This document shows, piece after piece, positions 17,175 to 37,153 of a stretch of 64,000 nt of DNA; position 1 is the stretch's first letter, and each line of letters begins with the position of its first letter. The stretch covers positions 62,001 to 126,000 of the forward strand of contig CALSCP010002159.1 in assembly GCA_943704425.1 (NCBI GenBank). The letters are read 5' to 3'. Made by a program: the position numbers and the translations under genes. The DNA comes from Ministeria vibrans ATCC 50519. Lineage: Eukaryota; Protista; Filasterea. The notes beneath the pieces are model-generated. The model had not been told where the DNA came from, did not search any database, and was given only the letters and a program-made list of their open reading frames with translations.

Positions 17175-20100
17175 TCACACAGTATCTTCTACAACCCCCT
17201 CAGACTCCGCTACAAAGGAGAGCGGCCTGGCGGAGCGGACGGGCGCATTCCGCGTCGCCGCCATGTAGCTGGTGTTGCGCATTGCGTTGTTCTGCATCCC
17301 CCCATCCAGTTCGTACTCCTCAACGACCGACTCACGCGACACACGACGTGAGTCTAGCATCGCCACCTCCGACTGGCTCACATCCGAATGACGCTGCACA
17401 AATTTGCGCTCTGAGTACGAGCGACGACGGTGCCGCACAAGCAACACCGTACCAATCAGCAGCATCAAGAGCACAAGGGGAATCACAACAAACACTGCGA
17501 CAGGCACACTCGATCCCGAACCCTGTCCGCTGCCGACCGTCGTCCCATTCGTCTGGCACTGCGCACCCGTGAACGAGCCCACACACACACACGTGTACGT
17601 GTTGACGCCGTCCGTGCACGCCCCGCTGTTCTGGCAGGGGTTGGGTGCACAGTCGTCAATGTTGACCGCACACTCACTGCCGGTGTACCCACTCACACAT
17701 GTGCATGTATACGCCGATGCGCCGCCAGCACACGTGCCCCCATTCTGACAGGGCGAGCTGGCACACTCATCCGGATTGCCCGCAAACGCGTAGCCACTGC
17801 CCGACACCCCTCCACACGACTGTGACGATGCACAGGTAAGCGCGCGACGACGTGAGGTGCTCTCGGCGCCCGCCAGTACAAACGACCCAGACGAATCCGA
17901 CTTGAAGTACAAGAAGACGCCCGAGGACGAGCCAAGACCGTTGGGCGCACCCACATTAAACGCCTTGTTCGCGGTCGCCGACGCGGGACTCAGACTAATG
18001 CGAATCATCGCGTTGCTTCCGTGCAACACTCCCGAGGGATACGCCGGTGCACCGCCCGAGCCCGGCGTCACCTGCTCAACCGTAATGGTTACGTCCGTAC
18101 TAAACGTCCCCGGATACACCTGCACGCTCACAGTACCACCCAGCAGGGTCACCGACTGCTCGCCACTGGCCGCTGTAACCAAAAGTCCCTCCTGAGCACA
18201 CTCGTCTCCGACAAAGCCCGACGCACACGCACACGTGAAACTGGTCACACCGTCCGTACACACTCCACCGTTCTGGCACGGATTGGGCACACAATCGTTC
18301 ACGTTCACCTCGCACCGTGTACCCGTGTAGCCACTTTTGCACGCGCATGTGTACAACGCTGCGCCATTGCTGCACGTCCCGTCGTTCTGGCACGGCATTG
18401 ATGCACACTCGTCCACGTCCTGGTCACACTCGCTGCCAGTCCACCCTTGCGCACACGTACATGTGTGCCCGGTACTTACCGACCCACATGTACCGCCATT
18501 TTGACACGGCATCGACACACAGTTGTCCGTCGTCGCGTCGCAAACGGCACCCGAAAAGCCGGTGCCGGTGCAGTCACATGAAAACACATTTGGCGAGGGA
18601 GTGCTACACACGCCGCCGTTGACGCACGGCGACGACGCACACTCGTCAATATCCACCTCGCACAACGCGCCCGTGTAGCCAGAGTTGCAGGTACACGTGA
18701 ATCCATTCGCATTGTTGTTGCACACTGCACTATTCTGACACGGACTGGACGCGCACTCGTCAACGTCCGACGAGCACACAGTGCCACTGAAGCCTGTGTT
18801 CGCACAGTCACACAAAAAGCTGTTCACACCGTCGCTGCATGCGCCTCCATTGCGACACGGCGACGATGCACACTCATCCGCGTTCACGGCACACCCAATG
18901 CCGGTGTAGCCCATGACACACGAACACGAGTATTGGTCCACACCATCCACACATGTCCCTCCGTTCTCGCACGGATTCGACGCACACTCATCAATGTCCA
19001 CCGCACAGTCGCTGCCGGTGTAACCGGCCATGCACGCGCATGCGTGCCCATTCACACCATCAGTGCAGGTGCCGTCGTTTTCACACGGCGACGACGCACA
19101 CTCATCCACGTTCACGGCACACCCAATGCCGGTGTAGCCCATGACACACGAACACGAGTATTGGTCCACACCATCCACACATGTCCCTCCGTTCTCGCAC
19201 GGATTCGACGCACACTCATCAATGTCCACCGCACAGTCGCTGCCGGTGTAACCGGCCCTGCACGCGCATGCGTGCCCATTCACACCATCGGTGCAGGTGC
19301 CGTCGTTTTCACACGGCGACGACGCACACTCGTCAATGTCCACAGAGCACTGCACGCCAGTGTAGCCAGCAGCACACACACACGCGAATCCGTCGACATT
19401 GTCGGTACATGTCGCACCGCTTGCGCACGGGCTCGACGCACACTCGTCAATGTCCACAGAGCACTGCACGCCAGTGTAGCCAGCAGCGCACACACACGCA
19501 AATCCGTTGACATTGTCGGTGCATGTCGCACCGCTTGCGCACGGGTTCGACGCACACTCGTCAATGTCCAAAGAGCACTGCACGCCAGTGTAGCCAGCAG
19601 CACACACACACGCGAATCCGTCGACATTGTCGGTACATGTCGCACCGCTTGCGCACGGGCTCGACGCACACTCGTCAATGTCCACAGAGCACTGCACGCC
19701 AGTGTAGCCAGCAGCACACACACACGCGAATCCGTCGACATTGTCGGTACATGTCGCACCGCTTGCGCACGGGCTCGACGCACACTCGTCAATGTCCACA
19801 GAGCACTGCACGCCAGTGTAGCCAGCAGCACACACACACGCAAATCCGTTGACATTGTCGGTACATGTCGCACCGCTTGCGCACGGGTTCGACGCACACT
19901 CGTCAATGTCCACAGAGCACTGCACGCCAGTGTAGCCAGCAGCACACACACACGCGAATCCGTTGACATTGTCGGTACATGTCGCACCACTCGCACACGG
20001 GCTCGATGCACACTCGTCCACATCGTCGTCGCACGTCACACCCGTGTAGCCTGCTTGACATGTACACGTGTGTCCGTTGACAACGTCCACACACGAAAGC

Positions 20101-23100
20101 GTATTCGCCGCATGGCATGGCGACGACGCACATTCGTCGGTGTCCGCTTCACAACGCACACCATAGTACCCGCCGACGCAATCGCAGTCGAAACCACCCG
20201 CCAAATTGGCACAGGTTGCACCGTTCTCGCACGGCGACGACTCACACTCGTCCAAGTCGACCGTGCACAGCTCACCAGTGAATCCTTGTGCACACACACA
20301 CGAGAAGACATTTGGGACGGGCGTCGTGCACGATGCACCATTGCTGCAGGGAGACGACGCACACTCGTCAATGTCCACATCACATGTTGTATCGGTGAAT
20401 CCCGTCACGCACGTGCACACAAAGTCCACGCCCACATCCGTGCATGTCGCCCCATTGCGACAGGGCGACGACAAACACGCACTCAGCGACGTCTCACATT
20501 GCTGACCGGTAAACGCAAGAGCGCAAGAGCACGCATACTCACCGAGGGCAGGTGTCGTGCATGTCGCACCATTGCTGCATGGTGACGACGCACACTCGTC
20601 AATGTCCGCCGCACACGTTGAACCCGTGTAGCCTGTGACACACATGCACGCAAAGCCGTTTACGTTGTCAATGCACGTGGCAGCGTTCATGCAGGGGGTC
20701 GGCGCGCACTCGTCAATATCCGTCTCGCATGCCAGTCCGGTGTAGCCAGCAACGCAGGTGCACACAAAGCCATCAACGTTATCAACGCATTCCGCTCCGT
20801 TGCGACACGGACTCGACGCACACTCGTCGACAGGAGCGTCGCAAAGAGAGCCGGAGAACCCTGAAGGGCACACGCAAGTAAACTTGTTCACGCCATCGAT
20901 GCAAGTTCCGCCGTTGGCACACGTCGCCGCAGCGCACTCGTCCACGTTGCTCTCACACACGATGCCGGCCCAACCAGGATCGCAGGCACACGTGTATCCC
21001 TCCACAGGCGACTCGCTACACACACCGCCATTCATGCAGGGCGAGGACTCACATTCGAGAATGACTACGTCGCACAACGTGCCCGTCTTCCCCGCGACAC
21101 ATGTGCACATGAACATTCCAGCACCGTCGACGCACGTCGACATGTCTCGGCAAGGCTGCGACGCACACTCGTCCAAGTCCACGTCGCAACTGTCGCCCTC
21201 AAAGCCAAGAGCACATGCACACGTGCGACCCAGATGTAAATCGGTACATGTGGCGCCGTTCAGGCAGGGACTCAGCGCGCAGTCGTCGATAGACTCGGCG
21301 CATGACGCGCCCGTGTACCCGGCGCTACACACACACGAGTACTCGGCTACACCGTCAACACAGGTGCCGTTGTTTACGCACGGCGCCGACACGCACTCGT
21401 CAATGTCCGTCTCGCACGTCTCACCTGCGTAGCCATTGACACACGCACACGTAAAGTTCTTTCCAGAGGAGTCGTCGCAAACGCCGCCATTCAGGCAAGG
21501 ATTCGACAGGCAAATCGGTACCCACACAATGATAATTTCGTACGTTTCGGTGCGATTGCTCTCAAGGTAGTCCACAAAGTGCAGCAAATCGTACACGTCG
21601 TCGGGGGTGTTCTCATTGTGCGAAATACGGAAGTCAGCCCAACTGTTGGCCGCAAGCAACGTAGCGCCGTCGCTCTGGCGCGTCACCGACAAAATTCCGG
21701 GCGCCTCGTGCGTTGTGGGGTTGTCAAGACGCACATAGATAAAACCAAGGGCATCGACACTCGTCGTCACCGAGATGGTACTGCGTCCCACCAGCTGGTC
21801 GTCATTGATGACCGTGGCCGACACCTGATCGCTGCCCATACTTGTGCAAGGGTACACGTCCACGCCATTGCTGCTGTACACAGTGTCCGGCATGCTCTCA
21901 GTATCCACAGCGCCGTCCGCCAGGAAATCGAGCAGCCCATCATCGGGCGACTCAACCGACGCAGGAATTTGCATCGTGTGCGTAAGCGACAGTAGCACCA
22001 CATTGTCAATGAGCGACAGTTCGGGGTCGCCCAAAGGATTGATGTTCTCAAAGGTCGCCTTGTACGAAATGAACTCGCCTTGCAATGAGCACGTCAGCTG
22101 CCAATAGACGACAACCGATGAGTGTGCGACCACGTCGCCCAAACTCGCCGTGAGTGACGGACTCACCACACCCGTATTCACCTGTGTCGATTCAATCAAA
22201 AAGTCAATCAGGAGACCCTTGTCGTTCTCGACAATCTCCGGCTGCGACGACGTAAGCGACATGTCCTTTGCTGTTCCATAGCCATTGTTGCGCAGCAACA
22301 GCGCAAGCGTAAAGGGCACGCGTGGTTCCTTCTCTGGCGTAAACGGATCGTCGCTGAACACTTGACGTTGCAAAAAGTACGTCAAGTTCATGCGCGGATC
22401 GGGCGACACGGTAATCTGGTCGGGGTAAAGAGTGTTGGTGAAGTGTGCGCCGCCATTGGTGTACTCGAAGGTGCCGCCCACGGTGTAAATGGTGTCTTGA
22501 GTTGGAGCTGCACTCTGACGCGGAATAATAAGCCAGCTGGCCTCGCCCGACGTCTTCGACGACAGCGTTCCATTGCCGTCCACCGACGTCACGCCGACGA
22601 GAACGGCGTCGCCCATGGCAAAGTGCAGGTTGGCCACGTTGCCTTCCGAGTCCTTCACCTCGAGCACCACTCGCATGTTGGTGAGCGGCGAGTCGGCGCC
22701 ATTCGATACTTCCAGGCGAGCCGTAAAGGCGCTGCGCGTCAGTACGAGCTCTTGCGAAATCTGAATCTTCACCGTGGCGCACACGCCTGCCTTGCCGGTC
22801 GTTGCGTCCTGCTGGAAAACAGCCGTGTCCGCATCGAATGCCGTGAAAAATCCAGCAGGTTGCGCCGCCCGATCTCCACGGTATTTCTCAACCTGGATCG
22901 CCAGCAGCTTGCCGTCAATGAAATAGGTGGATTCGCCGGGCGCCGCATCATCTGGTGACTGCACGCCCGCATCCCAGTTGTTCATGGTGCGGTTCCAGCG
23001 ATCCAGGAAGAGCGTCGTGTCGTTCAACTCGAGCCCGTCCGGCACGGGCTGCACCAGCGTCTCATACTCGACATCGCTCAGCGCAAGACCATAGGCGCTG

Positions 23101-26100
23101 TCCTGTGCGACCGCCGTCTTGAACCTGTTAGACCAGTCGGTGTCGTTGACCTGCAGCCAGAGCGAGTCGCCAAATACATTTTCCATCATGTCCGCAAAAT
23201 TGCTTGACATGGCTCCGTTGTCGACAACAGTCTCGCCGAGCTCCGTGGCGCCACGACGACGCCCGCCACTGCCGCACTTGACCAACTTCGACACGCACTT
23301 CCACACATCCATCATTTTCGTCACCTTCTTCTTCACCTCCTTCAGCACCTTGATCACCTTTTTGATGGGGTTCTTGGGCGTCTTCATGTTGCCAGCGACA
23401 AGACCGACGGCTGCCCCGGCATTGCTGGGCGGATCGTTCCAGATCTCAATCACAACCGAAATGGTCTCGAGAACCGTGATGATTTTGGAGACGGGCGAGA
23501 ACGAGATGACACAGTCCAAAATGCTCTGCACGCATTCGTTGCAAATCAAAGACTGCGAAAACTCAACGGGGGTAGAATAGTCACTCTGAGGGGTCGAGCC
23601 ACAGCCGCTACAGCCACTACCATAAAAGGTGGTGCTTCCACCGCCACATCCACCGCTCCCACACCCACCACCAGAAGGGCTTCCACACGGACTGCCGCCA
23701 TTAGTTACAATCGGAATTTTGATGCCTCGGTCCTTGTCGCCACATCGGTACACTGTGGTCGCCCCCAGTCCAAAGCAGGACGAGCCGGCGCGTCGCTGCA
23801 GGTGATGTTGCACGTAGTGATTTGCCTCAAGCGACGATTCGATTGTCGACGCACGGCGACGACCAGCCAGCGTGCGTGTGTCCGTGATCTTTACCGTGAG
23901 CGACACACTTGCGTTCGCCGCAATGCTAATGTTGTTCATGGACTGGAAACCGTCCGAAATAAGCGTGAAGTCCAGGAATGGATGGTTCGACGGCAACGAC
24001 ATGCTCAACTTGTCGGTGCGAATCAGACCGTGATTCGTGTAGACAAACACCAGCTCGTCTACGTCGCCCGTCTCCAATAGATCAAAATCGACCGTATTGG
24101 GCGTGACGGTCACAACGGGCTGAGGCACATTCACTTCAAAGACTGCCTCCAGCACGATTTTGTACACGTCCTTGACAGGCGTTGGCGTGACGGTGAACAC
24201 ATACGTAATGGCGTTGCGATGCAAAAAGGCGTAGAGGGGATCCGTGTTGGGCGTGACATGCTGGACGCTGCGGAAACCCTCGTGTCCGAGTGCTTGCGCC
24301 GTGATGGTGTAAAAATCTTCCTTGATGTTATAAAAGGTCACGTTTCCGCCCGCATCCGTGCGCAAGCTGTAGCGTGCGCCGCTCGTCCGGCCGACAATCG
24401 TGACAGTGGCGTCGCTCACATATGGCTTCAATGCCGTAAAGTAAGTCGCCTCGTCCTCGACAAACACGGTAAAATTGACGCTCACCAGCGACACAACCGT
24501 GTACGAAAAGTGCACGGTGAGCGCCGTGATGTTGCTGCGCACCAGGAAGGTTCCCGAGCCGTCGCCGAGAGGAAAGTTGGCGGGCGGGTTAAACAGCAGG
24601 TCGAGTGTCGAAGAGTTGCCGGAAAGCAACTGTGGCAGGAGGGTGGGTGTTGACAGCGAGAGCACCGGCTCGTTTGCCGGCATCACCACCTCAAGCGGGT
24701 AGGTGGTTGCCTCGCCGACGTTTGCCACCTCAATCGACCGAATGGTCTGTTTTCCCCGTGCAATAGTCGCACGAACACTCGATGGGGCCGCTGCAAGTTT
24801 AGGCACTCGGTTGCGCACATCAAGTCCAATTCTCGCCGAGCCCGTCGGACCTTCACTCGTTGCAAAGAACACATCGACATCCTTGGCAAACTGCGATGCC
24901 TGCGTGTCCACCGTCACGTTCACTGTGACAGAGCCAAGCGCTGCAAGAGACGTGCCACTGAGCGCAACGGTGAAGGCGCTCAAGGGGCTCAGCGAAGAAA
25001 GGACTGTCGCGCTCAAGTTGGTCAGCGGCACATCGCCCATGTTCGTAACGCGAAGCACAGCAGCAAGTGTGGTCGCGCCCGGATGGATAATTTGGCGCGT
25101 GTACGACGGTGACACGCCAATGCGGAGAATCTGAAAGGTCAATTGAGTCGGCGCGTAGGCGGAGACAACTGGATGGCGCGCACCCACCAAGAAGAGTCCG
25201 GCGTCGTTACTGACCGGATGAAAAAACTTGCGGTAGTTGCCCTCCGACGAAGTTGTGGTCGTGAGCACACGCTTGTATCCGCGCACATTGACCCACACTT
25301 CGACTGGAACACCTCCGGCAATTGCTCCGGTGCTAACATAGCGCGCAACACCCTCAAACAGCACGGGTTCGGTCGTGAGCATGGACGTTACCGTCGTCGT
25401 GATCGACACGTTGTAACTTGGTGGCACTGACAATGTCCACAAACGCTCATTTTCTCCGGCAGAATTCGACACGCGAGCGCGCACGGTGTACGGTGCCTCG
25501 CGTGCCACCGTCGAGGGCCACTCGACAACGCCCGTCAGAGAATCGATAGTCATGCCAGCGGGACCTTCCTGAAGTGACCACGACTGCGGTGTCGATCCCA
25601 CCGACGCCGTCAGACCAACCGTGTACAAGGTTGCTTCCGTTGCGATCACAGTTGCGTCCTCCGCAATGGGCGTAACGTCGACCACGGGTGGTATGACGGG
25701 AATGTCACAATTAGTGCCTTGCCACTGTGAGAAGCAAGAACATTCACCGATGACGCAGGTGCCGTGAGTGGCGCCACCACAGTCGGTCGAACACGAACCG
25801 TAGTAGTTGAAGGAGACGGCAAAGAAGCTGTACCAGCTGCCGTTGTCTTCGGAGAGCTCCACGAGTCGCGCGCCCGCCGCAAACGGTGGCGTGACACACT
25901 CAATTTTGCTGGGGCTAGACAGGAGCGCGACCCCCGCGACAATTTGTGACGAGCCAAAGCGGCAACGGTACGTGTGCTCGGTGGTGTTACAGTTGTCACA
26001 GTCGACGATCACTCGTGTGCCGCCCAGGTCAATTCCAATGCTAGGTGTGACGGAGAGCACGGCAGGCAGTGGCAAACACGAACTGCCATAGTTGTGAAGC

Positions 26101-29100
26101 GTACACAGATTGCACAGACTTCCCGTCCAATTGGGGCCGGAGCAGTCGCAACCGCCAACCGAGTTGCACGTGCCATGGACACACGAGGGACACAACCGAC
26201 AGTCAAGTGGAGCAGCCTTCCAGTAGTTTGAGCGACAATCGCTGCAATCGGCGCCCGCATAGCCACTGGCGCATGAGCATGTGTCGGGCGCCGTGCAGGA
26301 ACCTTTGCCGTTGCAATTGGACACGCCGCTGCACGACGGATACCGGCAGTCGGGTGCGATCCAGCCGGCGGTACAGTTGCACGTGTTGGGCCCGACACAC
26401 TCACCATGACTGTAGCAGTTGAAGATGCCGTTGCACGAAAATTGGCTGCAGTCAGAGCCGGTCCAACCGCTGTCGCACACGCACGAACCGTCGCTCAGAC
26501 AGAAACCATGGCGGCTGCAGTCGTTGCACACACACTCGCGATCTTTGGTCTGGTTCTTCGCGCCACAAACTGTCTTCTCGTATTGTGTCGAATCGCAAGC
26601 GGGAGAACAGTCGACGCAGACCGAATCAAGGATGTACTGTTCGCTTGGACAGGCGTTGGCACACGCAGTGCCCGACAACACTTGGCCAAGTCGTTCGCAG
26701 ATGAAGCCCTCCGTGACGTCGGTGCACGACGAACCGGCGTAGCCCAAACGGCACGTGCACTGTTGCGGCTGATTGCAGAAACCGTTGCCGCTGCAGTCGT
26801 TCAGTGCCGAGCAATTTGCTGACTGGCAGAATGGCGGGTTCCAGTCCGCCTCGCATGCGCACACATCAAACCCAATGCAGGCGCCGTGATCGTTGCAACT
26901 GTTGACTCCCGCGCACGTTGGCTCGGAGCAATTTGCACCGCCCCAGCCGGTGAAACAGTCGCAACTGTCCGGCCTGAAGCACAGGCCGTTGTCCGAGCAG
27001 TTGTTACGCGAAGTGCAGTCAAACGAGAAGCTCTCGAGGAAGGGAGTATACACCACGTCGGTGAGCGATGCCACGTCCTGTTGGTCACGCACTCGCAGCG
27101 AAACGCCCACTGCAGTTGCCACGGACCACCAGTTTTGCTCGGCAAAGAGCGTCGCACCGTACGTTGCCGACGCTGAGTTGGCATTGAGCTCGTACGCATA
27201 AAGGGGATTCTTGAACAGATTGAAGTGCACATGCGGCAAGTACGACGCGTCAACAAGCAGCGTTGACTCGAGACCCGTCGAGGTTGAAGTACCCGTGACC
27301 GGTGAATTGGAGCGGAACACATTGCTTGTAATGTTGTGGTAGCCCGCTCGTGAGACGGACCAGCGCACAAGGGAGGCGCCTTGACACGAGTCAAACTCGT
27401 TCTGGGCAAACGAGAGTCCCCGCTTGTCAAAGTATGTGTACCCCGAGTAGTGCCGGAGATAGATGTAGACGCAGGCAATCGCGTCGCGACAGACAAAGTT
27501 GACGGCGGTGTTCTTTTCGATCTCATAGATGCGGACGGTGGGTTCGCTGTAGGTGGCCACTTGAAAGGTCATGATGCGCTGAGCGGACGGTGTGTCTCGG
27601 AACGTGTTGCTGACTACCGATACACGTTTGGCGTAGTATGATGTACTTGTGTAGGCAATGTGCAGCGCGGTGTTCCCAATAGCCTGGAAGACATTGTCGT
27701 GCACGTTGGAGATGAGATTGTACGCGGAAAGGGAATGGACTACGCCGTGCGAGGCACAATTCTGAAAGGTTGAGTTTGCGACCTCGAGGTGATTACTCGC
27801 CGACGAGAGACAGTAACCGGACGAGTATTGTACGAGCGAATCGCGAATTGTAGCAGAAATAGTGGCAAACTCAACCGTGTGGGTGCTGGTCGACGCTCCA
27901 TTGCCGCTGAAAGTCGATCGCTCCACCAGTGTTGAGCCACCCGACGTCGTGGTGGCGTACAAGCCGCCGCCGCGGTTGAACTCAAAGACACAGTCGCTCA
28001 CTCGGAAGGCGGTCGAGGCCGTGGTGCGCAAGTAGACGCCCCGCAACGAAGTGCTGAGCGAGCGAGAGACGGTCACGTTGATCATCCAGGCGTATGTGCC
28101 CTTGGTGTCGTCAAAGACGACACCACCGCCCGCCGAGTATCGAATCAACAGGTGTTGAAGGTGCGCCGTGGACTGAACACCTTGAATGACGCCGACCTTG
28201 GTACCGTCAAACAAACCCCCACCATACTCGAAGAGAACATTCTCCACGATGGAGCCGTCCACAAGCTCGGGCACGGCACCCGTCGTGTCGTAGCGTGCGC
28301 TCGTGCTCTTCTCGCTAAAGTACACCTGACCCCAGTCGCCCTCGAGGGGATTCGCGTTCGCCGACGTGAACACAATCGGCAGATCGCGCGTCCCTTGTGC
28401 GAAAAGTTTGCCATTGACAAGCCACACCACGCCCGTCTCCATGGCAAGTTGCACGCCAGGCTCGATCACAAGTGTCACACCCGCTTGAACGGTAATCGAG
28501 CCGCTCACAATGTACGGCTCGGCGCGATAGGGAATCACCGAATCCTTGCCCACCGAACCCTTGAGCGTCCCATCAGCTCGCAAAAATGAGACGCGTTCCG
28601 CATCGGGGTGCAGCGTGTCAGTTAGGTTCTATAAAAGTATAATAATATTATTAATATTATTATCATTTTATATTTTATTAGTATTATTGTTTTATTATTG
28701 TGTTTTTATGATGTTTTCTTTTTACCGCAGATAACAGATACGGGAAATACTCGACAAGGGCCGTGGTTGGGTTCTCAAAGTAGTCTTCAATGACTGACTC
28801 GATGGTCAACTCACTGATGGTGCCCCACCAACAATTGGTTGCGACAATTGGACCGCGAGTGACAGGCAGAGCCGCATTGACGACTGTCGTGGCATTGTTG
28901 TTGTCGTAGAAGTTATTGGGCATCGTGACGGCATAGCTTGTGTCGGCAATATTGAAAATGGCAATAGAAGCCGTGTTGTTACGCAAGTCATTGTGCTCAA
29001 AGTCCGACGATCCGGTGGCAGTAAAGAAATTCCAAGAGATCATATTGGCTGCTGTGTTACTCTCAATCACGTTTGATTGCATGATCAGACGCTCCGAGTA

Positions 29101-32100
29101 GGGTGTACCAAAACTCAACTCAATCAGTGAGCCGCCACTAAAATGCCACCATTACAAGTGAGTCCCAAAACACATCATAAAATTAATTAATTTAACAACA
29201 AATTACCTGTACGAGCAGTCGCGAAATGTGTTGCCTGAAATCACAAAGAGTTCGCCGATAGCGCCCGAGCGACGGTACATGTACGAACCGCCGCGCAAAG
29301 CCCGATTGTTCTCAATACGCTCAAAGATATTGTCTTGGACAGTGAATCGGTACATGCTCTAGATTGAGAAAAGAAGAAGAAAAACATAATATTTAAGTTA
29401 GTGCTCCACTTGAAAAAACTATTAATAAATCAATTCTAGTACGTAAGTGGCATATCGAATGGCTTGGAAGTAACCGCCGCCGCGACAATCGTGCAAATGA
29501 GAGTTCTTCAACGTCACTTCATGGGATGAAGTGTGTATGTGCTGGTAAATCCCTACACAACCAAAGTATCAAAAAATAAGGATTAGTCACAACGAACCAA
29601 AACCACAAGGAATCGCTCAGAGCGTACCAAACCCAGCGCAATCAGAGACTGTAATGTTGTCGGCAACAAAGTAGTAGACGTAGTTGAGCAAGTAGAGACA
29701 GTGCGAACCGCTACCGCGCACGGTGGTGTCACTACAGAAGACATAAAATTAGCGTTGTCAAAGACATGAATACATTATGAAAATGCACTATTTCAACTTT
29801 TCAAACTTACCGCATGTACAAATAGCCTCGATTCATATACAGGGTGTAGACTGAAGAAGGAGCGTTGACATTCATGTTGGTGAAGGAGGAGCCATCGAGA
29901 AAAAGGCGCGCGTTGTTGTTGACCGAGTAGAAGTAGAGGTTGGGGCCGTTGTAGCCCTGGTCCACGACACAATCGCGCAGGATCAAGGTGCGCCCGCTCT
30001 GAGGATCCGACCAAAAAGCATAGCGCGTCGACGCCGACGTAGCCAGCCCCGACGAGTTGGTCAGGCGCACATCGTCAAACACAGTGGTGTACTTGAGACT
30101 GTTTAGACGCACCGCGCCTACAAGAGAGCCGACAAACTCAACGTGCAGCAGGTATGGAGCAGTTTCGGTGCACGTGATCGCATAGCTGCTAGTGGTTGAG
30201 CCAGCATTGACAATGCGAACGTGCTCGAGAATGGAGCCAATCGTGAGAATCTGAGCATCATAATTGGTCGAGGAAAAGGTGCAGGGAGGCGCAGAATTGG
30301 AGAAGGCGAGGCCGTCCCACGTTGCCGACGCGTCTGGGCCAGTGGCTGTGAAGACAATAGGCGCAACGTCAGTGCCTTGCGCAATCAAGCGACCCTGCAC
30401 AGCAAATCCAACACCGGGAGCAAAGACAAGCACACAGCCAGGCTCGATAATGAAAGTGACGCCCTCCGAGACGGACAGGGTCGCGGTGACATTGTAGGGC
30501 GAGTTGATCGCCGGCAGAGTGTAGTTGGAGCCAACAACACCTCGCAGTTCACCATTTCCACGAAGAAACGTCAGACGAGGTGAGTCGGGATCAATGAGCG
30601 ACGACTGATTTGCCGCAAGCAGGAACGGGAAGGTGTTCACAAGAGCCTGTTGTGTATATGAAAAAAAGAAGAAAAAAAAGGTCAGAGACAAAACCGCACA
30701 CCATTGCACACTCATACGTAGGCGTTGTTATCGGTGAAATCATAGATGCGTGACTGCATCACCTCCTCGTCCGTGGTGCCCCAGAAACACTCAGTGGCAT
30801 CCATCTAGAAAGAGATAAACAAATTAATGAAAATATATTTCTATCTTATATCCATGGGAGACATTAATTGATATTTTTCTTACGGGACCACGCACGAGAG
30901 GAAACGCCACAAACAGCTCCTGGTCAAACGTGGGATTGACAAAGTAGTTTCGCTTGAGATCAAGTGGATACGAGGTCGTGTCAAAGGTGACGGTGGAGCG
31001 CGCAGAAACCGACACGGCGGTGGTCGGCGAACCGACGTAACTGTTGTTGCGAAAGTCGTTGAAAGAAAACGAGATGGGCGGTTTGGGTTGCAGACGGTTC
31101 CCCCGAACCACGACACCAGTCGCCGTGTTGTTCGTAATAGTGTTGTTCTCGAAGAAGAGGCGGTCTGTGTAAAGGCAACCGCATTAAAAGCATAATACAA
31201 TCATAATAATGAAGAAAATAATGACAATAATAATAATAATAATTATTATTATTATTATTATTATTATTATAATTATTATTATTATTATCATTATTATTGC
31301 TGTTGTTGTTGTTGTCATATTGATAAAGAAATGTAAGACGAAAGCACTTACTATTAGAGTAGCCCGACACTGTAAAGTAGATGCACTGTGCCGTACAGAG
31401 GTTGTTGACAATGAGATTGTCGGTGAAAAGGAACAGCCGCTCGGCGTTGGTCGACGCATAGAACGACAGGTAGAGCGCAGTGCCCACATTATTCTCAATG
31501 AGCTACACATAAATTGTTAGACACAGAGCTGTATTTCATTCTGTTTTGCACCGTACGTTCCCTTGGATAAGTCCACCATGTTTGTAGTAGGAGTTGTAAC
31601 GCGAGTCAGCAATCAACCCGCTCCCGCATCCAGTGATGACGTTGTCGATATATTTGAAGTAATACGTCGAACTTATCAAGCAAGGGGAAAGAGAAGAGAC
31701 GAGATAAGGATAAAAAGAAGAAAACAAATCTGGTTCTACCTCGTTCGGGAATACTGACGGACGCCCCAAGATCCAACGTTTCGAATGGTGCAGCCGGTCA
31801 CATAAAGACGATAGCAATAGTTGTATGCGTATATGCCATACCCTAAAAAAAATGTGCAATACAATCATTTTAATAACAATAATAATAATACAAAAAATAA
31901 AAAATACAATTTAAATCTATTATTATTAACAATTTACCTCGGAAGTCGGAGATGTTCGAGTTCTGGACCTCAATAACATAGGCACTCGCCGAGTAGACAC
32001 CATGATGATTGGTTGAAGGAGACGCAGATTCGTAGGAGAGCTCCGAGTCGGACAGATAGACACCGCCGTAGTTGTTAGAAGACGTATACTGAATGGCAGT

Positions 32101-35100
32101 TGCGTGAGACTTGACAATACGCATTCGTCGGATAGTAATCCACGGCCTTTGTGACGAAGTGGCCGTCAGAGACACTTGAATCTGAGATCCCGTCTGGTTG
32201 AACAAGTACACGTCATCGAGTGCCATGTAGCTCGCCATGAGCGACGAGTACTGGATTCCGTTAGTACAGTGGCGGATTTCCACATTGCGCAAGTACGGAG
32301 CATACTACAAAAATATGAAAGAGGGGAAGGAGGGTGAGGGAGAAAATGAGAAAGTACGACGTGAGAGAGGGAAAAGGCGATAGAACAAGGAAAAGAATAA
32401 AGTGAGAGAAATAAAAATAAAAACACTTTGATGAGTGCGTACCGACTGTGCCGTCAGAACATACGAGCTGCTGTCACCGCCGCCAAACTCGAGAATGACA
32501 TGCTCGAGAACACTGCCACCCGAGATGTACTGCAGCTCAAAACGAGTGTGATTGTACAGACCCTGCGACAATGATGAGAAGGACAGACTGCCCCAGCTGC
32601 CGGGGACACGTGTGGCACTGGTGAAAACAATCGGCAACAGAGATTGGCCTTGCGCAATGAGAGAGCCCGAGACGGTGAACGACACGCCGTCGTTCATCAA
32701 GAACGTTGTTCCCGGCTCCAGTGTGAGAATGACATCCTTGGCAACATTGAGCGAACCCGTCACGTTGTAAGTTCCCGCCGGCAGAGTATAGTTGCTGCCA
32801 ACAGTTCCTACAAAACAGAGAAAAAAAATGACAATGAGTCTCGAAAAGATTTAGGGTAGCACTTATTGTTAGTCTACCTTGCATCCGGTTGCCACCACGC
32901 AAGAAGCTCAGACGCGGCGCGTTGGGATCCACTCCGTCCGAGAAATTGGCTGAAACAAGGTAAGGGAAAAAGTCAACTTGGGCGAGGTCGGGATTCTCTT
33001 GGAAGTCATAGATGGACTCTTCAATGCCGATTTCGTTGGAGGTGCCCCAGTAGTTGTAGAGAGCCAGGAGAGGCCCTTGCACAAACACGGGTGCTTCTAC
33101 TCTGACCAAAAACGGGAAGTTTCCGTCCAAGAAGTTCCACTGGAAGGAATCCACGGGGTACGTGTTGGCGAGGTAGAGCAGGGCAGAGGAGGACGAGGTG
33201 GGGTCGAGCGCGATGTTGCCACGAAGGTCGTTTCCGTCAATGTACGTGGGGGAGGTGGCGCTTTGCACAAACGTGTAGATGAGCTTGAGACACGTGTTGT
33301 TCGTGAGAGTGTTGTTGTGCACGTAAAAACGGTAGCTGTCGGAGTAACCACCGACGGTGAGAGCCATCACATAGTCTGAGACAGTGCAGTTGCGAATGGA
33401 GTTTCGTTCGATGCGAAAGACGTCCGCCGAGTTCTGAATGTAACCCGCATAATTGATAGCGTAGCCCGTCAGCTCTTCAAAGAGGTTGTCTTGCACAACA
33501 AATGTGGACGAGTAGTAGCTATTGTAGCGATGCTACAAGAAAATATATGAATAAATTAATAACACTTAAACTAAACATCACACAGTGTGTGTGCATAATC
33601 CTTTTCGTACCCAATTGTGAATGCCGGATCCGCATCGCCGAATGGTGTTTCCCGTACAGGTGAGCTGATCGTTCTGGCTGCGATAGTAGAGGGCAATGGC
33701 GGTGCCGCGCACATCCTCAAAGGTTGTGTTGGTGACCGAGACCAGACGTGTGTAATAGTATGCGTAAAAACCTAACAAAGCGAAGAGACGACAAGTGCGT
33801 TTAGAGAACTGTTTACTTAATATTATATTTTCTTCTATTTCTTTTCTTATAGTTTTTTTGTGTGTAGTACCTTCGCCAGTGTAACCAGAAATTTCAGCCT
33901 CGTTGATGTTGACACGAAGAAAGTTGTACACGTAAATGCCACGCTTGGCGGTGGGATCAACGACAGAGTTGTTGAACGAGTACGAGCCCTAATAAAACAA
34001 AGAGAGTGAAAACAAAATGTGAATGTACGTGTGTGTGTGTGTGTGTGACTGAGTATGTGTACCTTGGTGACATACAAGTAGCCATACCCACTGCTTGTCG
34101 AGTAGGCGTACACAGCGGGTGCACGCGATTGGACCGTTTCACAATCGTCCATGTACACGTGGGTGTGGGCGGCGGAGATGGAGAGGAACTGAAAGTCGTA
34201 GACAGTGGAGCGAGCGGAGGCAATGGCGCGCACGCGCGTGAGCACCACACGCGAGTCGTGGGGAAGGGAACCAAACGAGACGGCGCCATACGAGTTCTCG
34301 ACAGTAACGTCAGACAGGTACGGGGGATACTTGGTGGCGACAATAGCCTGCGTCGAAGTGCCCGAGAGCGTTTTTCCGGCGAAGCGAATGATGCAGTTCT
34401 TGAGAAGCGAGCCACTGACAAAAACGGGCGGGGTTGTTGATGTGTTGTACACAACCGGCGTGTCCGGCTGGCGAAATTCAATGCCGTGCCAATCTCCCGC
34501 AGCGCCGACGGCGGCAGTCGAGGTGAACACAATGGGCAGTGAGACAGAGCCCTCGGCTAATAGGATGCCGTCAACTTGAATAGTGGCGCCGGGAGATGCA
34601 CGGATCTCGGTGCCGGGTGCAATTGCAAGCTTGGCACCAGCACCCACGAGTAGTGTGCCGGTCAGGAAGTACGGCGAGAGGCTGGCCGACAAGAGAAAGT
34701 CCGAGTGGATCGTTCCAGAGAGAGAAAGCCCGCCAGATGTGGGGGTACCCGTCAGGAACGTCTCGTTACCGGGCACAGCGGAGCTCACGTCGTTGGGGTT
34801 TGTCGAAAGCAAGTATGGCACAAAGTTGACAAGCATGAGATCGATGTTGTCAAAGAAGTCATACTGCACAAAGACGATGTCATGTTTAAGTCGAGCATGA
34901 CAACAATAATATTATTTTGGCTTACGATGCGATAGGCAATGTCGCGAGGTTGGACGGCGGAGAAGAAGTTGCGGGGCGCCAAAATGGTTCCGTAGTTCTC
35001 AGTATATTGCGAAGAGATCTCGTAGAGAGCGGCGGGGTTCATAAAGAGATTGTCCTCGATGATGATGGGGTAGTAGTTGCCTGAGGGGAGCAGCAGTGCG

Positions 35101-35294
35101 GCCTGGTTGGCCGCCGTCGTGTGTGTCACGTGGTTGTCGCGCAGTGTGTTGGACGAGAAGTAGATGAGGCCGTTGGTGTAGGGTTTAATGATGCCCACAA
35201 TGTACCCGAATGTGTTCTCCGTTATCTGGTTGTTCTTGATCGCAAGCTGAACAAAAAATCAATAATTGTTAACAACAACAACAACAACAACAGC

Positions 35295-35347
<53 letters not shown>

Positions 35348-37153
35348 CAACAACAACAACAATATAATAATAATATAATAATAATACATCTTCTATTTTC
35401 GTACGGGAACATTGGTTGTGTCGCTGGCACCCGTGTTGATGTAGATCATGTAGCCAGTGGTCGAGAGCCCCGTGTTGTTGTGGAATGTGTTGTCGCTCAC
35501 CAAGAACTGCAGAACAAAGTGAGAAACATGGGCGTTGAGCGGGAAGTGAAATGAAGTGAAGAAAACATACGCTGTCGATGGTCGCAACGTTTGCCATTAG
35601 CATTGCAATGTTGAGCGCATAGTTGAATTGATTGTTGATCTAAGAAAAAGAAGAAAAAAAGAAAAGAAAAAACTTAGGCGAGTCTTTGACGGTTGTATCG
35701 CGAGTAACTTACAAACGTGTTTCCTCGCACAATGTAGCCACCATTGCGGTACGACGTGTACCTTGTGCGTATATACAATCCACTGTGCAAAGTGTGAGCC
35801 AAAAACGAATGAATCTTGGAATTATTTGAAAATGAACGTACTAATTGGTGACACCACGAAAGGTTGAGTCGGTGACTGAAACTTTGCGAGCGGCGCCATT
35901 CTCAAAGTTGTAATAGTAGAAGGCAGAGTGGGTGTCGATAAAGGAACAGTTGTGGATGGATGCACTCCCGTAGTAATAGGAGTAGATGGCGTGGTTATTC
36001 AAGTGAGAGAAGGTGGAGTCGGTGACGGTGAGAGTGTTCAACCGATAGGCGTAGACGCCGTAGTGCGATGTGCTCGTCGTGATGGGATCGCGAACGGTTG
36101 TTCCCGTCACAATGCCGTATCCGTACCCATTTGAGCCGGCAAAGTAGATGGCGATCTTTGCGATGATGGTGCTGCGGATGTAACTGTTTGCCACGGCCAC
36201 GGTTGCATGTGTGCTGGTGCGATACGCAAAGTACATGGGGTAGTTGCCCGCACAGTCGTTGATGGTAACGCCCTGGAAGAGCGCATAGTCCACCGTCATA
36301 TCACTGCCGTACAAGCCTGAAAAGGGGGAAAAGAGACGGAGAAGAAAGAAACAAAAAGAAAAAGAAAAAAAAAAACAAGAGATGTTGTGTGAAGAAAGCG
36401 GTGAGTCAGTGCTTATCATTTCAGTGTGCATATTAATATGAACCTCCAAAAAGCGGAGCGTCGATGTGAACATTGTCGAGATAGGGTGCTTCGCCGCCCG
36501 AGAAGGTGATGGCAGCTGTTGAGCTGTAACACAGACGTAGATGGGACCACGACGAGAGAGGAGTGAGTGAGTGAGTGCCACAAAATGAAAAAAGCTCCCA
36601 CAAAAAAAGAAAGATTTTTAAAAAGGTGGAAACAGAGCAAAGAAAAGTGTACCTTTCGCCAGCCCATTCGATGACGGCGTGCTGGATCATGGAGCCACGG
36701 ACAAACTCTTGGCCGCTGCCGAGGGTGCCTTCGCGGTAGCGAGCGCCGGTGGCGGTGCTGGCAAAGAGGATGCCGCGCCAGCGAGTGGGCGGTTGCGTTG
36801 CCGATGTGAAATTCACGGGGAGGAGCGCCGTGCCGAGAACCTGTAGGTCGCCGTTGACGACCAGGCGAGCGCTGGCTTGAAGAGCGCGCACGACGACGCC
36901 TTTGTAGATATGGTGTGTGAGTGAGAAGTGCGAATCTGTCATTTTACGGATATCACGCTGCGGGTGTACCTGCTTCGATGGTGAGAACGACGCCAGCATT
37001 GACCGACACAGAGTCGGCGAGGTCAACAGGGCTGTCGGCGAGCGTCCACGTCGTGGTTGAAGCGACTTCCGTCGAGACTGTGACCGCATCAACTGAGATG
37101 CACAGCGTGGTGAGCGCGACCAGCAGCAGAGAGAGCAGGCTCGCTACCGACAT
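17175..37153 (-). CDS. Giant (~5,900 aa, estimate) type I membrane protein: signal peptide, 5 right-handed beta-helix modules, tenascin-type EGFs, IPT/TIG, Ig-like domains, unnamed conserved domain, 29 cbEGF, ZU5-like domain, 2 EGF, TM, short tail
   Basis: ATG at 37153 gives MSVASLLSLLLVALTTLCISVDA. A chain of minus-strand ORF fragments with GT-AG junctions repeats one module type and runs into the 3802-aa ORF. The last exon is 17175-28628. The TM segment VPVAVFVVIPLVLLMLLIGTVLLV is followed by RHRRR. Not every 5' junction was checked for phase. Confidence 0.85.
18868..19323. repeat. Two near-identical 228-bp coding tandem repeats (two EGF domains each)
   Basis: gcacactcatcc(g/a)cgttcacggcacacccaatgccggtgtagcccatgac... 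occurs at ~18868 and ~19096. Confidence 0.9.
19327..20010. repeat. Six near-identical 114-bp coding tandem repeats (one EGF domain each)
   Basis: Unit cactcgtcaatgtccacagagcactgcacgccagtgtagccagcagc... starts at 19327, 19441, 19555, 19669, 19783 and 19897. Confidence 0.95.

What the first reader, a model, noticed from the sequence alone, without database searches (positions are those of the whole stretch)
17175..37153. ~20-kb gene for a giant mosaic surface receptor/adhesin with a domain order I do not recognise
Seen, in order: signal peptide; five ~500-aa beta-helix-type modules; tenascin-like EGFs (~27020-26070); IPT/TIG (~26065-25800); a He_PIG/dystroglycan-like Ig (WSLQEGPAGMTIDSLTGVVEWP); further Ig/CARDB-like and carboxypeptidase-regulatory-like sandwiches; a ~900-aa unnamed region; 29 Notch-type EGFs; a ZU5-like insert; 2 EGFs; TM; and an ~85-aa tail with tyrosines (EEYEL, TSYMA). 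It combines prokaryote-style surface modules with metazoan-style EGF stalks. Inference: a very long surface rod presenting glycan-binding heads, for prey capture, adhesion or colony formation, with several built-in processing sites. This is my best candidate for an undescribed system in the window.
Basis: partly seen in the sequence, partly recalled or inferred. Interest (0 to 1): 0.85.

Follow-up and report, generated by a model that had tools for sequence, protein, structure and literature searches.

The report
Giant Anakonda-like receptor with bacterial cassette
This is one real, expressed 25-exon gene for a 5,939-residue cell-surface protein of a single-celled relative of animals; it belongs to an unnamed family, shared with choanoflagellates and some animals, that joins Anakonda-type beta-helix heads to a ~1,300-residue block otherwise typical of giant bacterial proteins, and it carries three conserved cutting sites that suggest a receptor made in pieces.

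Summary
RNA contigs join the beta-helix exons to the 11,454-nt last exon as one transcript. The model has 25 exons and 5,939 aa; 16 of 24 introns have RNA support.

The domain order is as described: signal peptide, five ~527-aa beta-helix modules, teneurin-type EGFs, TIG, He_PIG, Ig-like and CarboxypepD_reg-like sandwiches, an unnamed region, 29 EGFs, a ZU5-like domain, 2 EGFs, a TM helix, and a tail ending in -DTV.

Findings added here:
- The "unnamed" region is part of a ~1,300-aa cassette found in more than 2,000 protein clusters, mostly giant bacterial proteins.
- The layout from beta-helix to cassette is colinear with uncharacterised proteins of Monosiga brevicollis and Saccoglossus, so it predates animals and is not unique to this organism.
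- The beta-helix modules are homologous to the repeats of Drosophila Anakonda/Bark beetle.
- The insert has a ZU5 fold (Z 10.6). It lacks the HFS self-cleavage motif and has instead an RRR loop conserved in all 10 copies in this genome.
- RRR occurs only three times in the ectodomain, each time at a conserved loop.

Ligand, cleavage and function are inferred, not shown. The scan noted a similar giant receptor on another contig (s1-763932). I rate this a new variant of a known kind, of moderate interest.

The parts
17175..37153 (-). Whole gene: 25 exons, CDS 17,820 nt, 5,939 aa, type I membrane protein
   Evidence: Spliced RNA contigs; model assembled and translated with one terminal stop
37085..37153 (-). 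Signal peptide (aa 1-23)
   Evidence: Read from the sequence: hydrophobic core followed by VDA. No predictor was run.
27030..37081 (-). Five right-handed beta-helix modules of ~527 aa (aa 25-2655), split by 24 introns. Module bounds: 34807-37081, 32975-34806, 30629-32974, 28741-30628, 27030-28740.
   Evidence: tblastn of module 5 on the upstream exons. Anchor periodicity and 25-32% identity. Pfam Beta_helix/NosD weak. Bark beetle repeats hit the N-cap of modules 2-5, E down to 1.6e-9.
26067..27023 (-). Teneurin-type EGF block (aa 2658-2976)
   Evidence: Pfam EGF_TEN 96.7 bits, EGF_Teneurin 86 bits
25431..26066 (-). IPT/TIG (25800-26066), DUF7949-type EGF (25698-25799), He_PIG (25431-25697)
   Evidence: Pfam TIG 23.5 bits (over cut-off), DUF7949 17 bits, He_PIG 20.4 bits. 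Same order in the Saccoglossus protein.
21525..25430 (-). ~1,300-aa bacterial-type cassette. Order: Ig/CARDB-like sandwiches, CarboxypepD_reg-like, Ig, Cys-rich segment, helical bundle, four beta-sandwiches.
   Evidence: phmmer: 3,648 hits, 2,010 at E<1e-30, many in one stretch over the 1,200-aa query. Alignment A1. AF2 model of the last 556 aa, pLDDT 87.7. No Pfam, NCBIfam or PDB sequence match for that core.
23253..23861 (-). Cys-rich segment (12 Cys, aa 3715-3911) bounded by RRR at 23853-23861 and 23253-23261
   Evidence: Sequence. Basic sites at the same two places in Saccoglossus, Haliotis, Halocaridina and Macrobrachium, and one in Monosiga.
18192..21515 (-). 29 EGF repeats, mostly calcium-binding type; six units at 19320-20018 are near-identical
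   Evidence: Pfam EGF 585 bits in 28 stretches, EGF_CA in 12 stretches. Regex count. TRF period 114, 96% matches.
17772..18191 (-). Extracellular ZU5-fold domain (aa 5602-5741) with RRR at 17844-17852 in the loop before the last beta-hairpin
   Evidence: AF2 pLDDT 81.9, pTM 0.80. Ankyrin ZU5 Z 10.6, then GAIN and FIIND. Foldseek TMq 0.60-0.66. Paralogue passes the Pfam ZU5 cut-off. RRR conserved in 10 of 10 genomic copies.
17178..17771 (-). EGF 30-31 (17553-17771), TM helix (17436-17507), 86-aa tail (17178-17435) ending in -EDTV
   Evidence: Pfam EGF; sequence

Best explanation
SHOWN. One gene encodes a 5,939-aa type I membrane protein. Earlier notes of this scan name the organism as the filasterean Ministeria vibrans; I did not verify that.

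The protein is the filasterean member of an unnamed, pre-animal family with this layout:
- Repeated Anakonda/Bark-beetle-type beta-helix modules.
- Teneurin-type EGFs.
- TIG.
- He_PIG.
- A ~1,300-aa cassette of Ig-like sandwiches, a Cys-rich segment and a helical bundle, whose nearest relatives outside eukaryotes are giant bacterial surface proteins.

This gene adds its own stalk: 29 mostly calcium-binding EGFs, a ZU5-fold domain, 2 EGFs, a TM helix, and an 86-aa tail ending in a class I PDZ-type -DTV.

INFERRED. It works as a very long adhesion receptor.
- The five beta-helix heads bind carbohydrate-type ligands on prey, substrate or other cells.
- The sandwiches and calcium-stiffened EGFs hold the heads far from the membrane.
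- During secretion a kexin/furin-type convertase cuts at the three RRR loops: two flanking the Cys-rich segment and one in the ZU5 domain.
- No cysteine bridges the ZU5 cut, so the huge outer part would be held only by the terminal beta-hairpin. That is the arrangement in Notch S1, GAIN and SEA modules.
- Load on the heads could then release the ectodomain.
- The stub and tail would link to PDZ scaffolds.
For: Single transcript and splice joints. Model.

Domain calls.

Cassette:
- Over 2,000 clusters at E<1e-30.
- Named bacterial members include Planctomycetes, Verrucomicrobiales, an Anabaenopsis S8 peptidase and IMG 'subtilase' entries.

Eukaryotic relatives:
- Members named; P0002 lies on an intron-bearing animal-type contig.
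- Colinearity with Saccoglossus: 34% identity over 1,711 aa. Colinearity with Monosiga.
- Eukaryotic rows form one side of a single branch, SH-aLRT 87.
- GC3 is uniform at 0.63-0.72 along the CDS, so the acquisition is old.

Bark beetle homology. [quoted passage not shown]

ZU5 domain:
- Fold.
- A paralogue passes the Pfam ZU5 cut-off.
- The HFS motif is absent, whereas canonical HFS/SFS ZU5 domains of the same genome align over the first two thirds.
- R115 is invariant and R116 nearly so across 10 copies that are 22-37% identical.
- 7 of 9 paralogous copies sit 0-3 EGFs from a TM helix.

RRR sites and supporting machinery:
- RRR occurs 3 times in 5,806 ectodomain residues, all at these loops. 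Shuffle mean is 0.23; 0.3% of 2,000 shuffles reach 3.
- Two proprotein-convertase P-domain genes are in the genome.
- Relatives carry lectin-type inserts in their beta-helix modules: WSC in Monosiga, SRCR in bark beetle and in amphioxus and Oscarella. CUB in Saccoglossus is read from the P0032 sequence; no Pfam scan was run on that protein.
Against: - No experiment or read data shows cleavage, a ligand or the protein's location.
- GRRR/SRRR lacks the P4 arginine of the classical furin motif, so only a dibasic (kexin-type) cut is predicted.
- Beta-helix Pfam hits are below the gathering scores, and no module was folded.
- The cassette core gives only generic Ig/MG-like fold matches, so it says nothing specific about function.
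- Eight 5' introns, one with a GTT donor, rest on inference.
- The tree is unrooted and most 'bacterial' rows are unnamed, so the direction of transfer is not shown.
- Orthologues in Monosiga, Saccoglossus, Haliotis and Adineta lack the RRR-ZU5 domain, so the shedding device is lineage-specific.
- The in-silico test of fragment association was not run.
Confidence: 0.55

Rival explanations
1. It works like Anakonda. The repeated beta-helix ectodomain self-organises between cell surfaces of the same species, for aggregates or contacts between cells or between filopodia and stalk. It would not bind prey or substrate glycans.
For: Module homology to the three Bark beetle repeats. Single TM helix and a C-terminal PDZ-type motif, as reported for Anakonda. 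The family is kept in animals.
Against: There are five repeats, not three. No SRCR, CUB or C-type lectin domains are present. Similarity is limited to about 65-75 aa per module. Nothing is known about cell contacts in this organism from the data used here.
Confidence: 0.2
2. The RRR sites are not cleavage sites. The protein stays as one chain, and the conserved basic loops serve another role, such as binding sulfated or acidic glycans, or a structural one.
For: P4 is Gly or Ser, which is not the classical furin pattern. Cleavage was not tested. Some relatives (Adineta, Fragilaria) lack the site before the core.
Against: The arginines are invariant or nearly so in 10 divergent ZU5 copies. In the model the motif lies in a low-confidence loop, as cleavage loops often do. 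RRKR, RVKR, RAKR and RLRR occur at the equivalent cassette positions in animals. Convertase genes are present.
Confidence: 0.25
3. The main product is a shed extracellular coat or matrix protein. The membrane anchor only serves for delivery, and no signal passes through the stub.
For: There are three candidate cuts and no cysteine tether across the ZU5 cut. The tail is short and has no enzymatic domain.
Against: The tail keeps a conserved acidic (Y/F)EL motif shared with paralogues and a PDZ-type end, which argues for intracellular partners.
Confidence: 0.15
4. Artefact: two adjacent genes, or an assembly chimera with bacterial DNA.
For: The intron-rich 5' part and the intron-free 11.4-kb 3' exon look different.
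Against: One RNA contig crosses the junction, in four studies. The cassette lies inside the same open exon as the EGFs. GC3 is uniform. The order is colinear in Monosiga and Saccoglossus.
Confidence: 0.02

Closest known systems
Anakonda / Bark beetle (Drosophila tricellular junction protein)
   Same: Repeated ~500-aa right-handed beta-helix modules, with sequence similarity at the N-cap of each module (E down to 1.6e-9). Type I membrane protein with a short tail ending in a PDZ-type motif.
   Different: Five modules, not three. No SRCR, CUB or C-type lectin domains. Bark beetle has no teneurin EGF/TIG/He_PIG/cassette part and no EGF-ZU5 stalk.
Uncharacterised holozoan proteins: Monosiga brevicollis XP_001745227.1 (4,479 aa) and Saccoglossus kowalevskii XP_006822956.1 (7,485 aa)
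   Same: Colinear order: beta-helix modules, teneurin-type EGFs, TIG, He_PIG, Ig sandwiches, CarboxypepD_reg, Cys-rich segment, core. Identity is 31-36% over about 1,500-1,700 aa. Basic sites occur at the same loops. TM helix and short tail.
   Different: Their beta-helix modules carry WSC (Monosiga) or CUB (Saccoglossus, read from the sequence). After the core, Monosiga has fn3, while Saccoglossus has cadherin-like repeats, mucin stretches and two more cassettes. Neither has the 29-EGF stalk or the RRR-ZU5 domain.
Giant bacterial surface proteins with the same cassette (e.g. Planctomycetes NQT18153.1, Anabaenopsis 'S8 family serine peptidase')
   Same: About 1,150-1,300 aa align in one stretch at 33-38% identity, including the Cys pattern and the helical-bundle-plus-sandwich core.
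   Different: No EGFs, beta-helix super-repeat, TM helix or tail of the eukaryotic kind. They are combined instead with CARDB arrays, dockerin, Big and RibLong domains, or S8 peptidase.
Teneurins
   Same: Teneurin-type EGFs (Pfam EGF_TEN) next to a CarboxypepD_reg/TTR-like sandwich and a large module of bacterial type, in a holozoan surface protein. The analogy is from general knowledge of teneurin structure.
   Different: Type I orientation, not type II. No NHL, YD-shell or Tox-GHH hit. The bacterial-type module is a different one.
Juxtamembrane cleavage modules: ZU5 with HFS (UNC5, PIDD, FIIND), GAIN/GPS of adhesion GPCRs, Notch S1/HD
   Same: ZU5 fold, with GAIN and FIIND as the next best matches. 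The domain sits just outside the membrane in most copies. The candidate cut lies before terminal strands that complete the sandwich.
   Different: No HFS/SFS or HL|T self-cleavage motif. It has a conserved RRR loop and a small Cys-x5-Cys loop instead, so the cut would need a convertase, as at Notch S1. No LNR, NOD or ankyrin domains.

Membership tests
Anakonda/Bark beetle family | Beta-helix repeat modules homologous to the Aka repeats | tested here: met
   phmmer E 4.4e-11 to Rhagoletis bark beetle. tblastn hits from its three repeats to modules 2-5.
Anakonda/Bark beetle family | Tripartite ectodomain with SRCR, CUB and C-type lectin domains | tested here: not met
   Five modules. No SRCR, CUB or lectin Pfam hit in any exon. 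Bark beetle itself shows SRCR.
Anakonda/Bark beetle family | Single TM helix, short tail, C-terminal PDZ-binding motif | tested here: met
   TM helix at aa 5830-5853; the tail ends in -EDTV. The feature is reported for Anakonda in PMC5509417.
Anakonda/Bark beetle family | Localisation and function at tricellular junctions | not testable with these tools
   Needs imaging and genetics.
Unnamed holozoan beta-helix/teneurin-EGF/TIG/He_PIG/cassette family | Colinear domain order from the last beta-helix module to the end of the cassette core | tested here: met
   Single 1,711-aa HSP with Saccoglossus. Ordered HSPs with Monosiga. The core groups with the eukaryotic rows.
Bacterial-type cassette | Full-length alignment to the ~1,200-aa cassette, including conserved core motifs | tested here: met
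   One-stretch matches over query 4-1198. 25 invariant columns in A1.
ZU5 domain | ZU5 beta-sandwich fold | tested here: met
   3f59_A Z 10.6, 126 of 140 residues aligned, rmsd 3.1. Foldseek probability 1.0, TMq 0.60-0.66.
ZU5 domain | Match to Pfam PF00791 | tested here: inconclusive
   No hit for this copy at E<=10. The paralogue on G000:C1157, 41% identical to this copy, scores 28 bits, over the cut-off.
Self-cleaving ZU5 (UNC5/PIDD/FIIND type) | HFS/SFS autoproteolysis motif | tested here: not met
   Absent in all 10 RRR-type copies. Present in canonical ZU5 domains of the same genome.
Notch | LNR/NRR module and intracellular RAM/ankyrin repeats | tested here: not met
   Pfam gives only EGF-type hits in the C-terminal 1,402 aa. 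The tail is 86 aa with no domain.
Teneurin | Type II orientation with NHL, YD-shell and Tox-GHH | tested here: not met
   N-terminal signal peptide and C-terminal TM helix. No such Pfam hits.

The most novel reading that the evidence does not exclude
A bacterial ~1,300-aa surface cassette was captured once, before filastereans, choanoflagellates and animals diverged. It was fused to Anakonda-type beta-helix heads, making this family a second teneurin-like case of a bacterial module built into the pre-animal adhesion toolkit and a possible ancestor-grade form of the tricellular-junction protein Anakonda. In this lineage it was further equipped with a convertase-dependent ZU5 'break point', a non-self-cleaving counterpart of GAIN/HFS modules, giving a force-releasable receptor in a unicellular organism.
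Probability: 0.3. Interest if true: 0.75.

Novelty: new variant of a known kind. Interest (0 to 1): 0.55.

Why it matters
Giant mosaic adhesion receptors are already known from unicellular relatives of animals. This family, however, is unnamed and unstudied, even though it is conserved from a filasterean and a choanoflagellate to hemichordates, molluscs, crustaceans and rotifers.

It matters in three ways:
- It ties the Drosophila junction protein Anakonda to a much older, larger protein type.
- It adds a second example, alongside teneurins, of a large bacterial-type module embedded in a pre-animal surface protein.
- It shows a ZU5 domain that has exchanged its self-cleavage motif for a conserved convertase-type site, next to HFS-type ZU5 receptors in the same genome. 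That gives a natural pair for asking how cleaved, force-sensitive receptors of the Notch and adhesion-GPCR kind arose.

All functional statements still need experiments.

Tried and rejected
- The first two automatic gene models mis-set the first three introns. I corrected them by reading the sequence.
- The cassette core and the insert gave no sequence match. Pfam found nothing convincing at E<=10 for either, NCBIfam found no convincing family for either, and PDB sequences gave nothing for the cassette. The insert was not searched against PDB sequences.
- Foldseek and VIA searches with the 556-aa core model gave only generic Ig/MG-like sandwiches: integrin alpha legs, pilins, TRAP-beta at Z 10.2. 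I reject an enzyme or toxin fold for the modelled part. The Cys-rich segment was not folded.
- The ESM Atlas gave unnamed clusters for the core. For the insert it gave only a sub-threshold ZU5 lead.
- The search for homologous proteins on the ZU5 region found nothing among proteins of 715-2,275 aa. This says little, because the search is limited by shared words and by length.
- Complex prediction on the two halves of the cut ZU5 domain came back 'not folded' because of a likeness filter on the EGF-bearing chain.
- The look-up of encoding contigs failed for P0032 (too long) and P0013 (not on record). The Planctomycetes neighbourhood was uninformative.
- Paper searches for the accessions found only an eggNOG label in a mussel transcriptome paper. 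No paper linked Anakonda to choanoflagellates.
- I considered thioester or isopeptide chemistry for the conserved Cys/Gln/Asn of the first core sandwich. I dropped it because the Lys is not conserved and no TED-like fold appeared.
- I rejected recent gene transfer because GC3 is uniform.
- The joined (spliced) protein was never sent to a search tool. Searches went exon by exon by reference. The joined model was used only in local scripts, for coordinates, repeat spacing, motif counts and composition.


Full report
GENE AND TRANSCRIPT.

The minus strand carries an open frame of 3,802 aa from 28583 to 17175. Upstream lie many short frames that resemble its first 530 aa five times over.

Public runs hold the stretch 28000-34000. 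I laid four of them, from four studies, on 28250-34249.
- An 11,827-nt contig of run X1 crosses 15 joints, all GT..AG on the minus strand. It then continues about 5 kb into the giant exon.
- Runs X5, X7 (polyA RNA-Seq) and X8 show the same joints.
- A 16th intron (33989-34062) fits the depth bins of that table.
- The first joint is 28629-28725, so the last exon is 17175-28628 (11,454 nt).

With these joints, one frame stays open for 5,116 codons down to the stop. For 33,871-37,153 I inferred eight more introns. I used a codon- and splice-scored search and then read the sequence by eye. One of these introns has a GTT donor.

The resulting model has 25 exons, a 17,820-nt CDS and 5,939 aa. The X1 contig holds 2,622 nt upstream of 33532, against 2,628 nt in the model. 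The model therefore fits if the contig starts at about CDS nucleotide 7; otherwise it is a few bases too long.

All 24 introns lie in the first 6.4 kb of the CDS and none in the last 11.45 kb. GC3 is even along the gene, at 0.63-0.72.

The joined protein was used only in local scripts. Every search tool received single exons by reference.

DOMAINS.

From the N-terminus:
- A signal peptide, aa 1-23.
- Five modules of 511-538 aa. An anchor motif falls at aa 89, 626, 1153, 1680 and 2206, and pairwise identity is 25-32%.
  - Pfam gives weak Beta_helix and NosD hits on several exons.
  - The N-cap of modules 2-5 matches each of the three repeats of 'protein bark beetle'.
- Teneurin-type EGFs, at 96.7 bits.
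- TIG, a DUF7949-type EGF, and He_PIG.
- Ig-like and CarboxypepD_reg-like sandwiches.
- 29 EGFs, many of the calcium-binding type, a 140-aa insert, and 2 more EGFs.
- A TM helix and an 86-aa tail that ends in -EDTV.

Six EGF units at 19320-20018 are 96% alike at the DNA level.

THE CASSETTE.

A 1,200-aa query (21525-25124) found 3,648 proteins among 1.84 billion representatives. Of these, 2,010 scored E<1e-30. Many aligned in one stretch across the whole query at 33-38% identity.

The alignment shows that the conserved block begins directly after He_PIG. It is therefore about 1,300 aa long.

Named bacterial members are a Planctomycetes MAG protein, a Verrucomicrobiales 'putative Ig domain-containing protein', an Anabaenopsis 'S8 family serine peptidase' and IMG 'subtilase family' proteins.

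Pfam, NCBIfam and PDB sequences do not recognise the last 556 aa.

An AlphaFold model of that part, built with 45 homologues, has pLDDT 87.7. It shows a 130-aa helical bundle followed by four beta-sandwiches. Fold searches return only generic Ig/MG-like matches. I therefore read the modelled part as a structural or binding platform, not an enzyme.

RELATIVES IN EUKARYOTES.

The best hit is Saccoglossus kowalevskii XP_006822956.1 (7,485 aa, uncharacterised). Other cassette-bearing proteins come from:
- Halocaridina
- Macrobrachium
- two Haliotis species
- Adineta vaga
- Monosiga brevicollis (XP_001745227.1)
- the diatom Fragilaria crotonensis

One further row lies on an animal-type contig with Ig and fn3 exons.

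The Saccoglossus protein aligns with window 27437 to 21567 in order, at 34% identity over 1,711 aa. It also has beta-helix modules upstream. The Monosiga protein is colinear too, from its beta-helix modules to the core. It carries WSC domains in those modules and an fn3 domain after the core.

Proteins of amphioxus, Oscarella and Tubulanus share only the beta-helix and teneurin-EGF part and lack the core.

In a 58-row maximum-likelihood tree of the core, the 23 eukaryotic or eukaryote-associated rows form one side of a single branch, with SH-aLRT 87. An earlier FastTree run had placed them together in a 25-row subtree.

The tree is unrooted and most other rows are unnamed. One ancient bacterium-to-eukaryote capture is therefore the simplest reading, given the very broad bacterial spread and the narrow eukaryotic one, but it is not proven.

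This genome has two more cassette genes, on contigs C1933 and C774.

CANDIDATE CUTTING SITES.

RRR occurs three times in the 5,806-aa ectodomain. The mean over shuffled sequences is 0.23, and 0.3% of 2,000 shuffles reach three.

Two of the sites flank a 197-aa segment with 12 cysteines, just before the helical bundle.
- The downstream site has RRKR, RAKR, RHKR, RLRR or RRRR at the same place in Saccoglossus, Halocaridina and Haliotis. Monosiga has RRRR slightly further upstream.
- The upstream site recurs in Saccoglossus, Haliotis and Macrobrachium.

The third site lies in the insert.

The genome encodes two proteins with a proprotein-convertase P domain.

The motif lacks an arginine at P4. 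I therefore predict a dibasic, kexin-type cut rather than a classical furin site.

THE INSERT IS A ZU5 DOMAIN WITHOUT THE SELF-CLEAVAGE MOTIF.

The genome holds at least nine more copies of the insert, at 22-88% identity. All of them keep the pattern R-R-(R)-x-x-(x)-C-x5-C-G.

A model built with these copies has pLDDT 81.9 and pTM 0.80. The RRR sits in a low-confidence loop before the last beta-hairpin.

The best structural matches are:
- ankyrin ZU5 (Z 10.6, 126 of 140 residues aligned, rmsd 3.1)
- GAIN domains (CD97, BAI3)
- the FIIND of CARD8/NLRP1
- UNC5b

Foldseek agrees.

One paralogue passes the Pfam ZU5 cut-off. Canonical ZU5 domains of this genome carry HHFS or SFS and align with the first two thirds of the insert. 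The RRR-type copies have no such motif.

The only cysteines of the domain lie after the RRR. A cut would therefore leave the two parts joined only by the hairpin's place in the sandwich.

In seven of nine paralogous copies the domain is followed by 0-3 EGFs, a TM helix and a tail. The orthologues in Monosiga, Saccoglossus, Haliotis and Adineta have no such domain.

Earlier notes of this scan report HFS-type juxtamembrane ZU5 domains in dozens of receptors of this genome. The RRR type is a second, distinct kind.

HOW IT PROBABLY WORKS.

Shown:
- one expressed gene
- the domain order
- the family relations
- the ZU5 fold
- the conservation of the basic loops

Inferred:
- The distal beta-helix modules bind carbohydrate-type ligands. 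This rests on the fold class and on the lectin-type inserts of relatives (WSC, SRCR, CUB).
- The sandwiches and calcium-binding EGFs form a long stalk.
- A convertase cuts at the three loops.
- The ZU5 cut produces a two-piece receptor that can lose its outer part under load, as at Notch S1 or in GAIN and SEA modules.
- The -DTV end binds a PDZ scaffold, as reported for Anakonda.

VERDICT.

The gene is a real mosaic of bacterial-type and animal-type modules with conserved candidate processing sites. It is not a unique architecture, however: it is the filasterean member of an unnamed pre-animal family, with Anakonda-type heads.

What is new here is the definition of that family, the bacterial-type cassette, and the RRR-type ZU5 module. 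I rate it a new variant of a known kind, with interest 0.55.

The organism name, Ministeria vibrans, comes from earlier notes; I did not check it. A similar giant receptor on another contig was reported before by this scan (s1-763932).

Noticed in passing
window 31242-31298 and 35295-35386: Long (ATT)n/(AAT)n microsatellites (19 and 31 units) lie inside two introns of the gene.
   Followed up: no
window 19320-20018: Six 114-bp EGF-coding units are 96% identical. A wider 228-bp periodicity spans 18850-20018. This points to recent tandem duplication or gene conversion inside the EGF stalk.
   Followed up: no
window 17175-37153: Intron placement is extremely skewed: 24 introns in the first 6.4 kb of the CDS and none in the last 11.45 kb. 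This is the pattern expected from 3'-biased intron loss.
   Followed up: no
window 36442-36443: The inferred donor of intron 36317-36443 is GTT rather than the usual GTA. This joint has no RNA support.
   Followed up: partly
G000:C1933:14189-20489 (L002, L004-L006, L014): A paralogous gene on the same strand carries a cassette core (61-67% identical, split by introns). About 4 kb downstream it has an RRR-type ZU5 domain, one EGF, a TM helix and a tail.
   Followed up: partly
G000:C1809:4003-4419 (L008): A second gene ends in a C-terminal part with a ZU5 domain 88% identical to this one, followed by 2 EGFs, a TM helix and a tail with the related motif EEFELD. It looks like a recent duplicate of the stalk end.
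   Followed up: partly
window 17178-17435; L008, L013: The tails of this protein and of paralogues share an acidic (E/D)(E/D)(Y/F)EL motif (EEYEL, EEFEL, DDFEL).
   Followed up: no
runs X5, X6, X9 (seawater) and X7 (marine, polyA): Environmental metatranscriptome assemblies hold the spliced form of this gene with only a few base differences. The organism or a very close strain therefore occurs and expresses the gene in sea water.
   Followed up: no
P0159 (Fragilaria crotonensis KAI2492738.1): A diatom protein carries the cassette core and groups with the holozoan rows near Monosiga. This does not fit a purely holozoan history.
   Followed up: no
G000:C2228 and C2085: GT90 (POGLUT/CAP10-like) genes are present in the genome. 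This is relevant to the C-x-S-x-P-C sequons seen in most EGFs.
   Followed up: no
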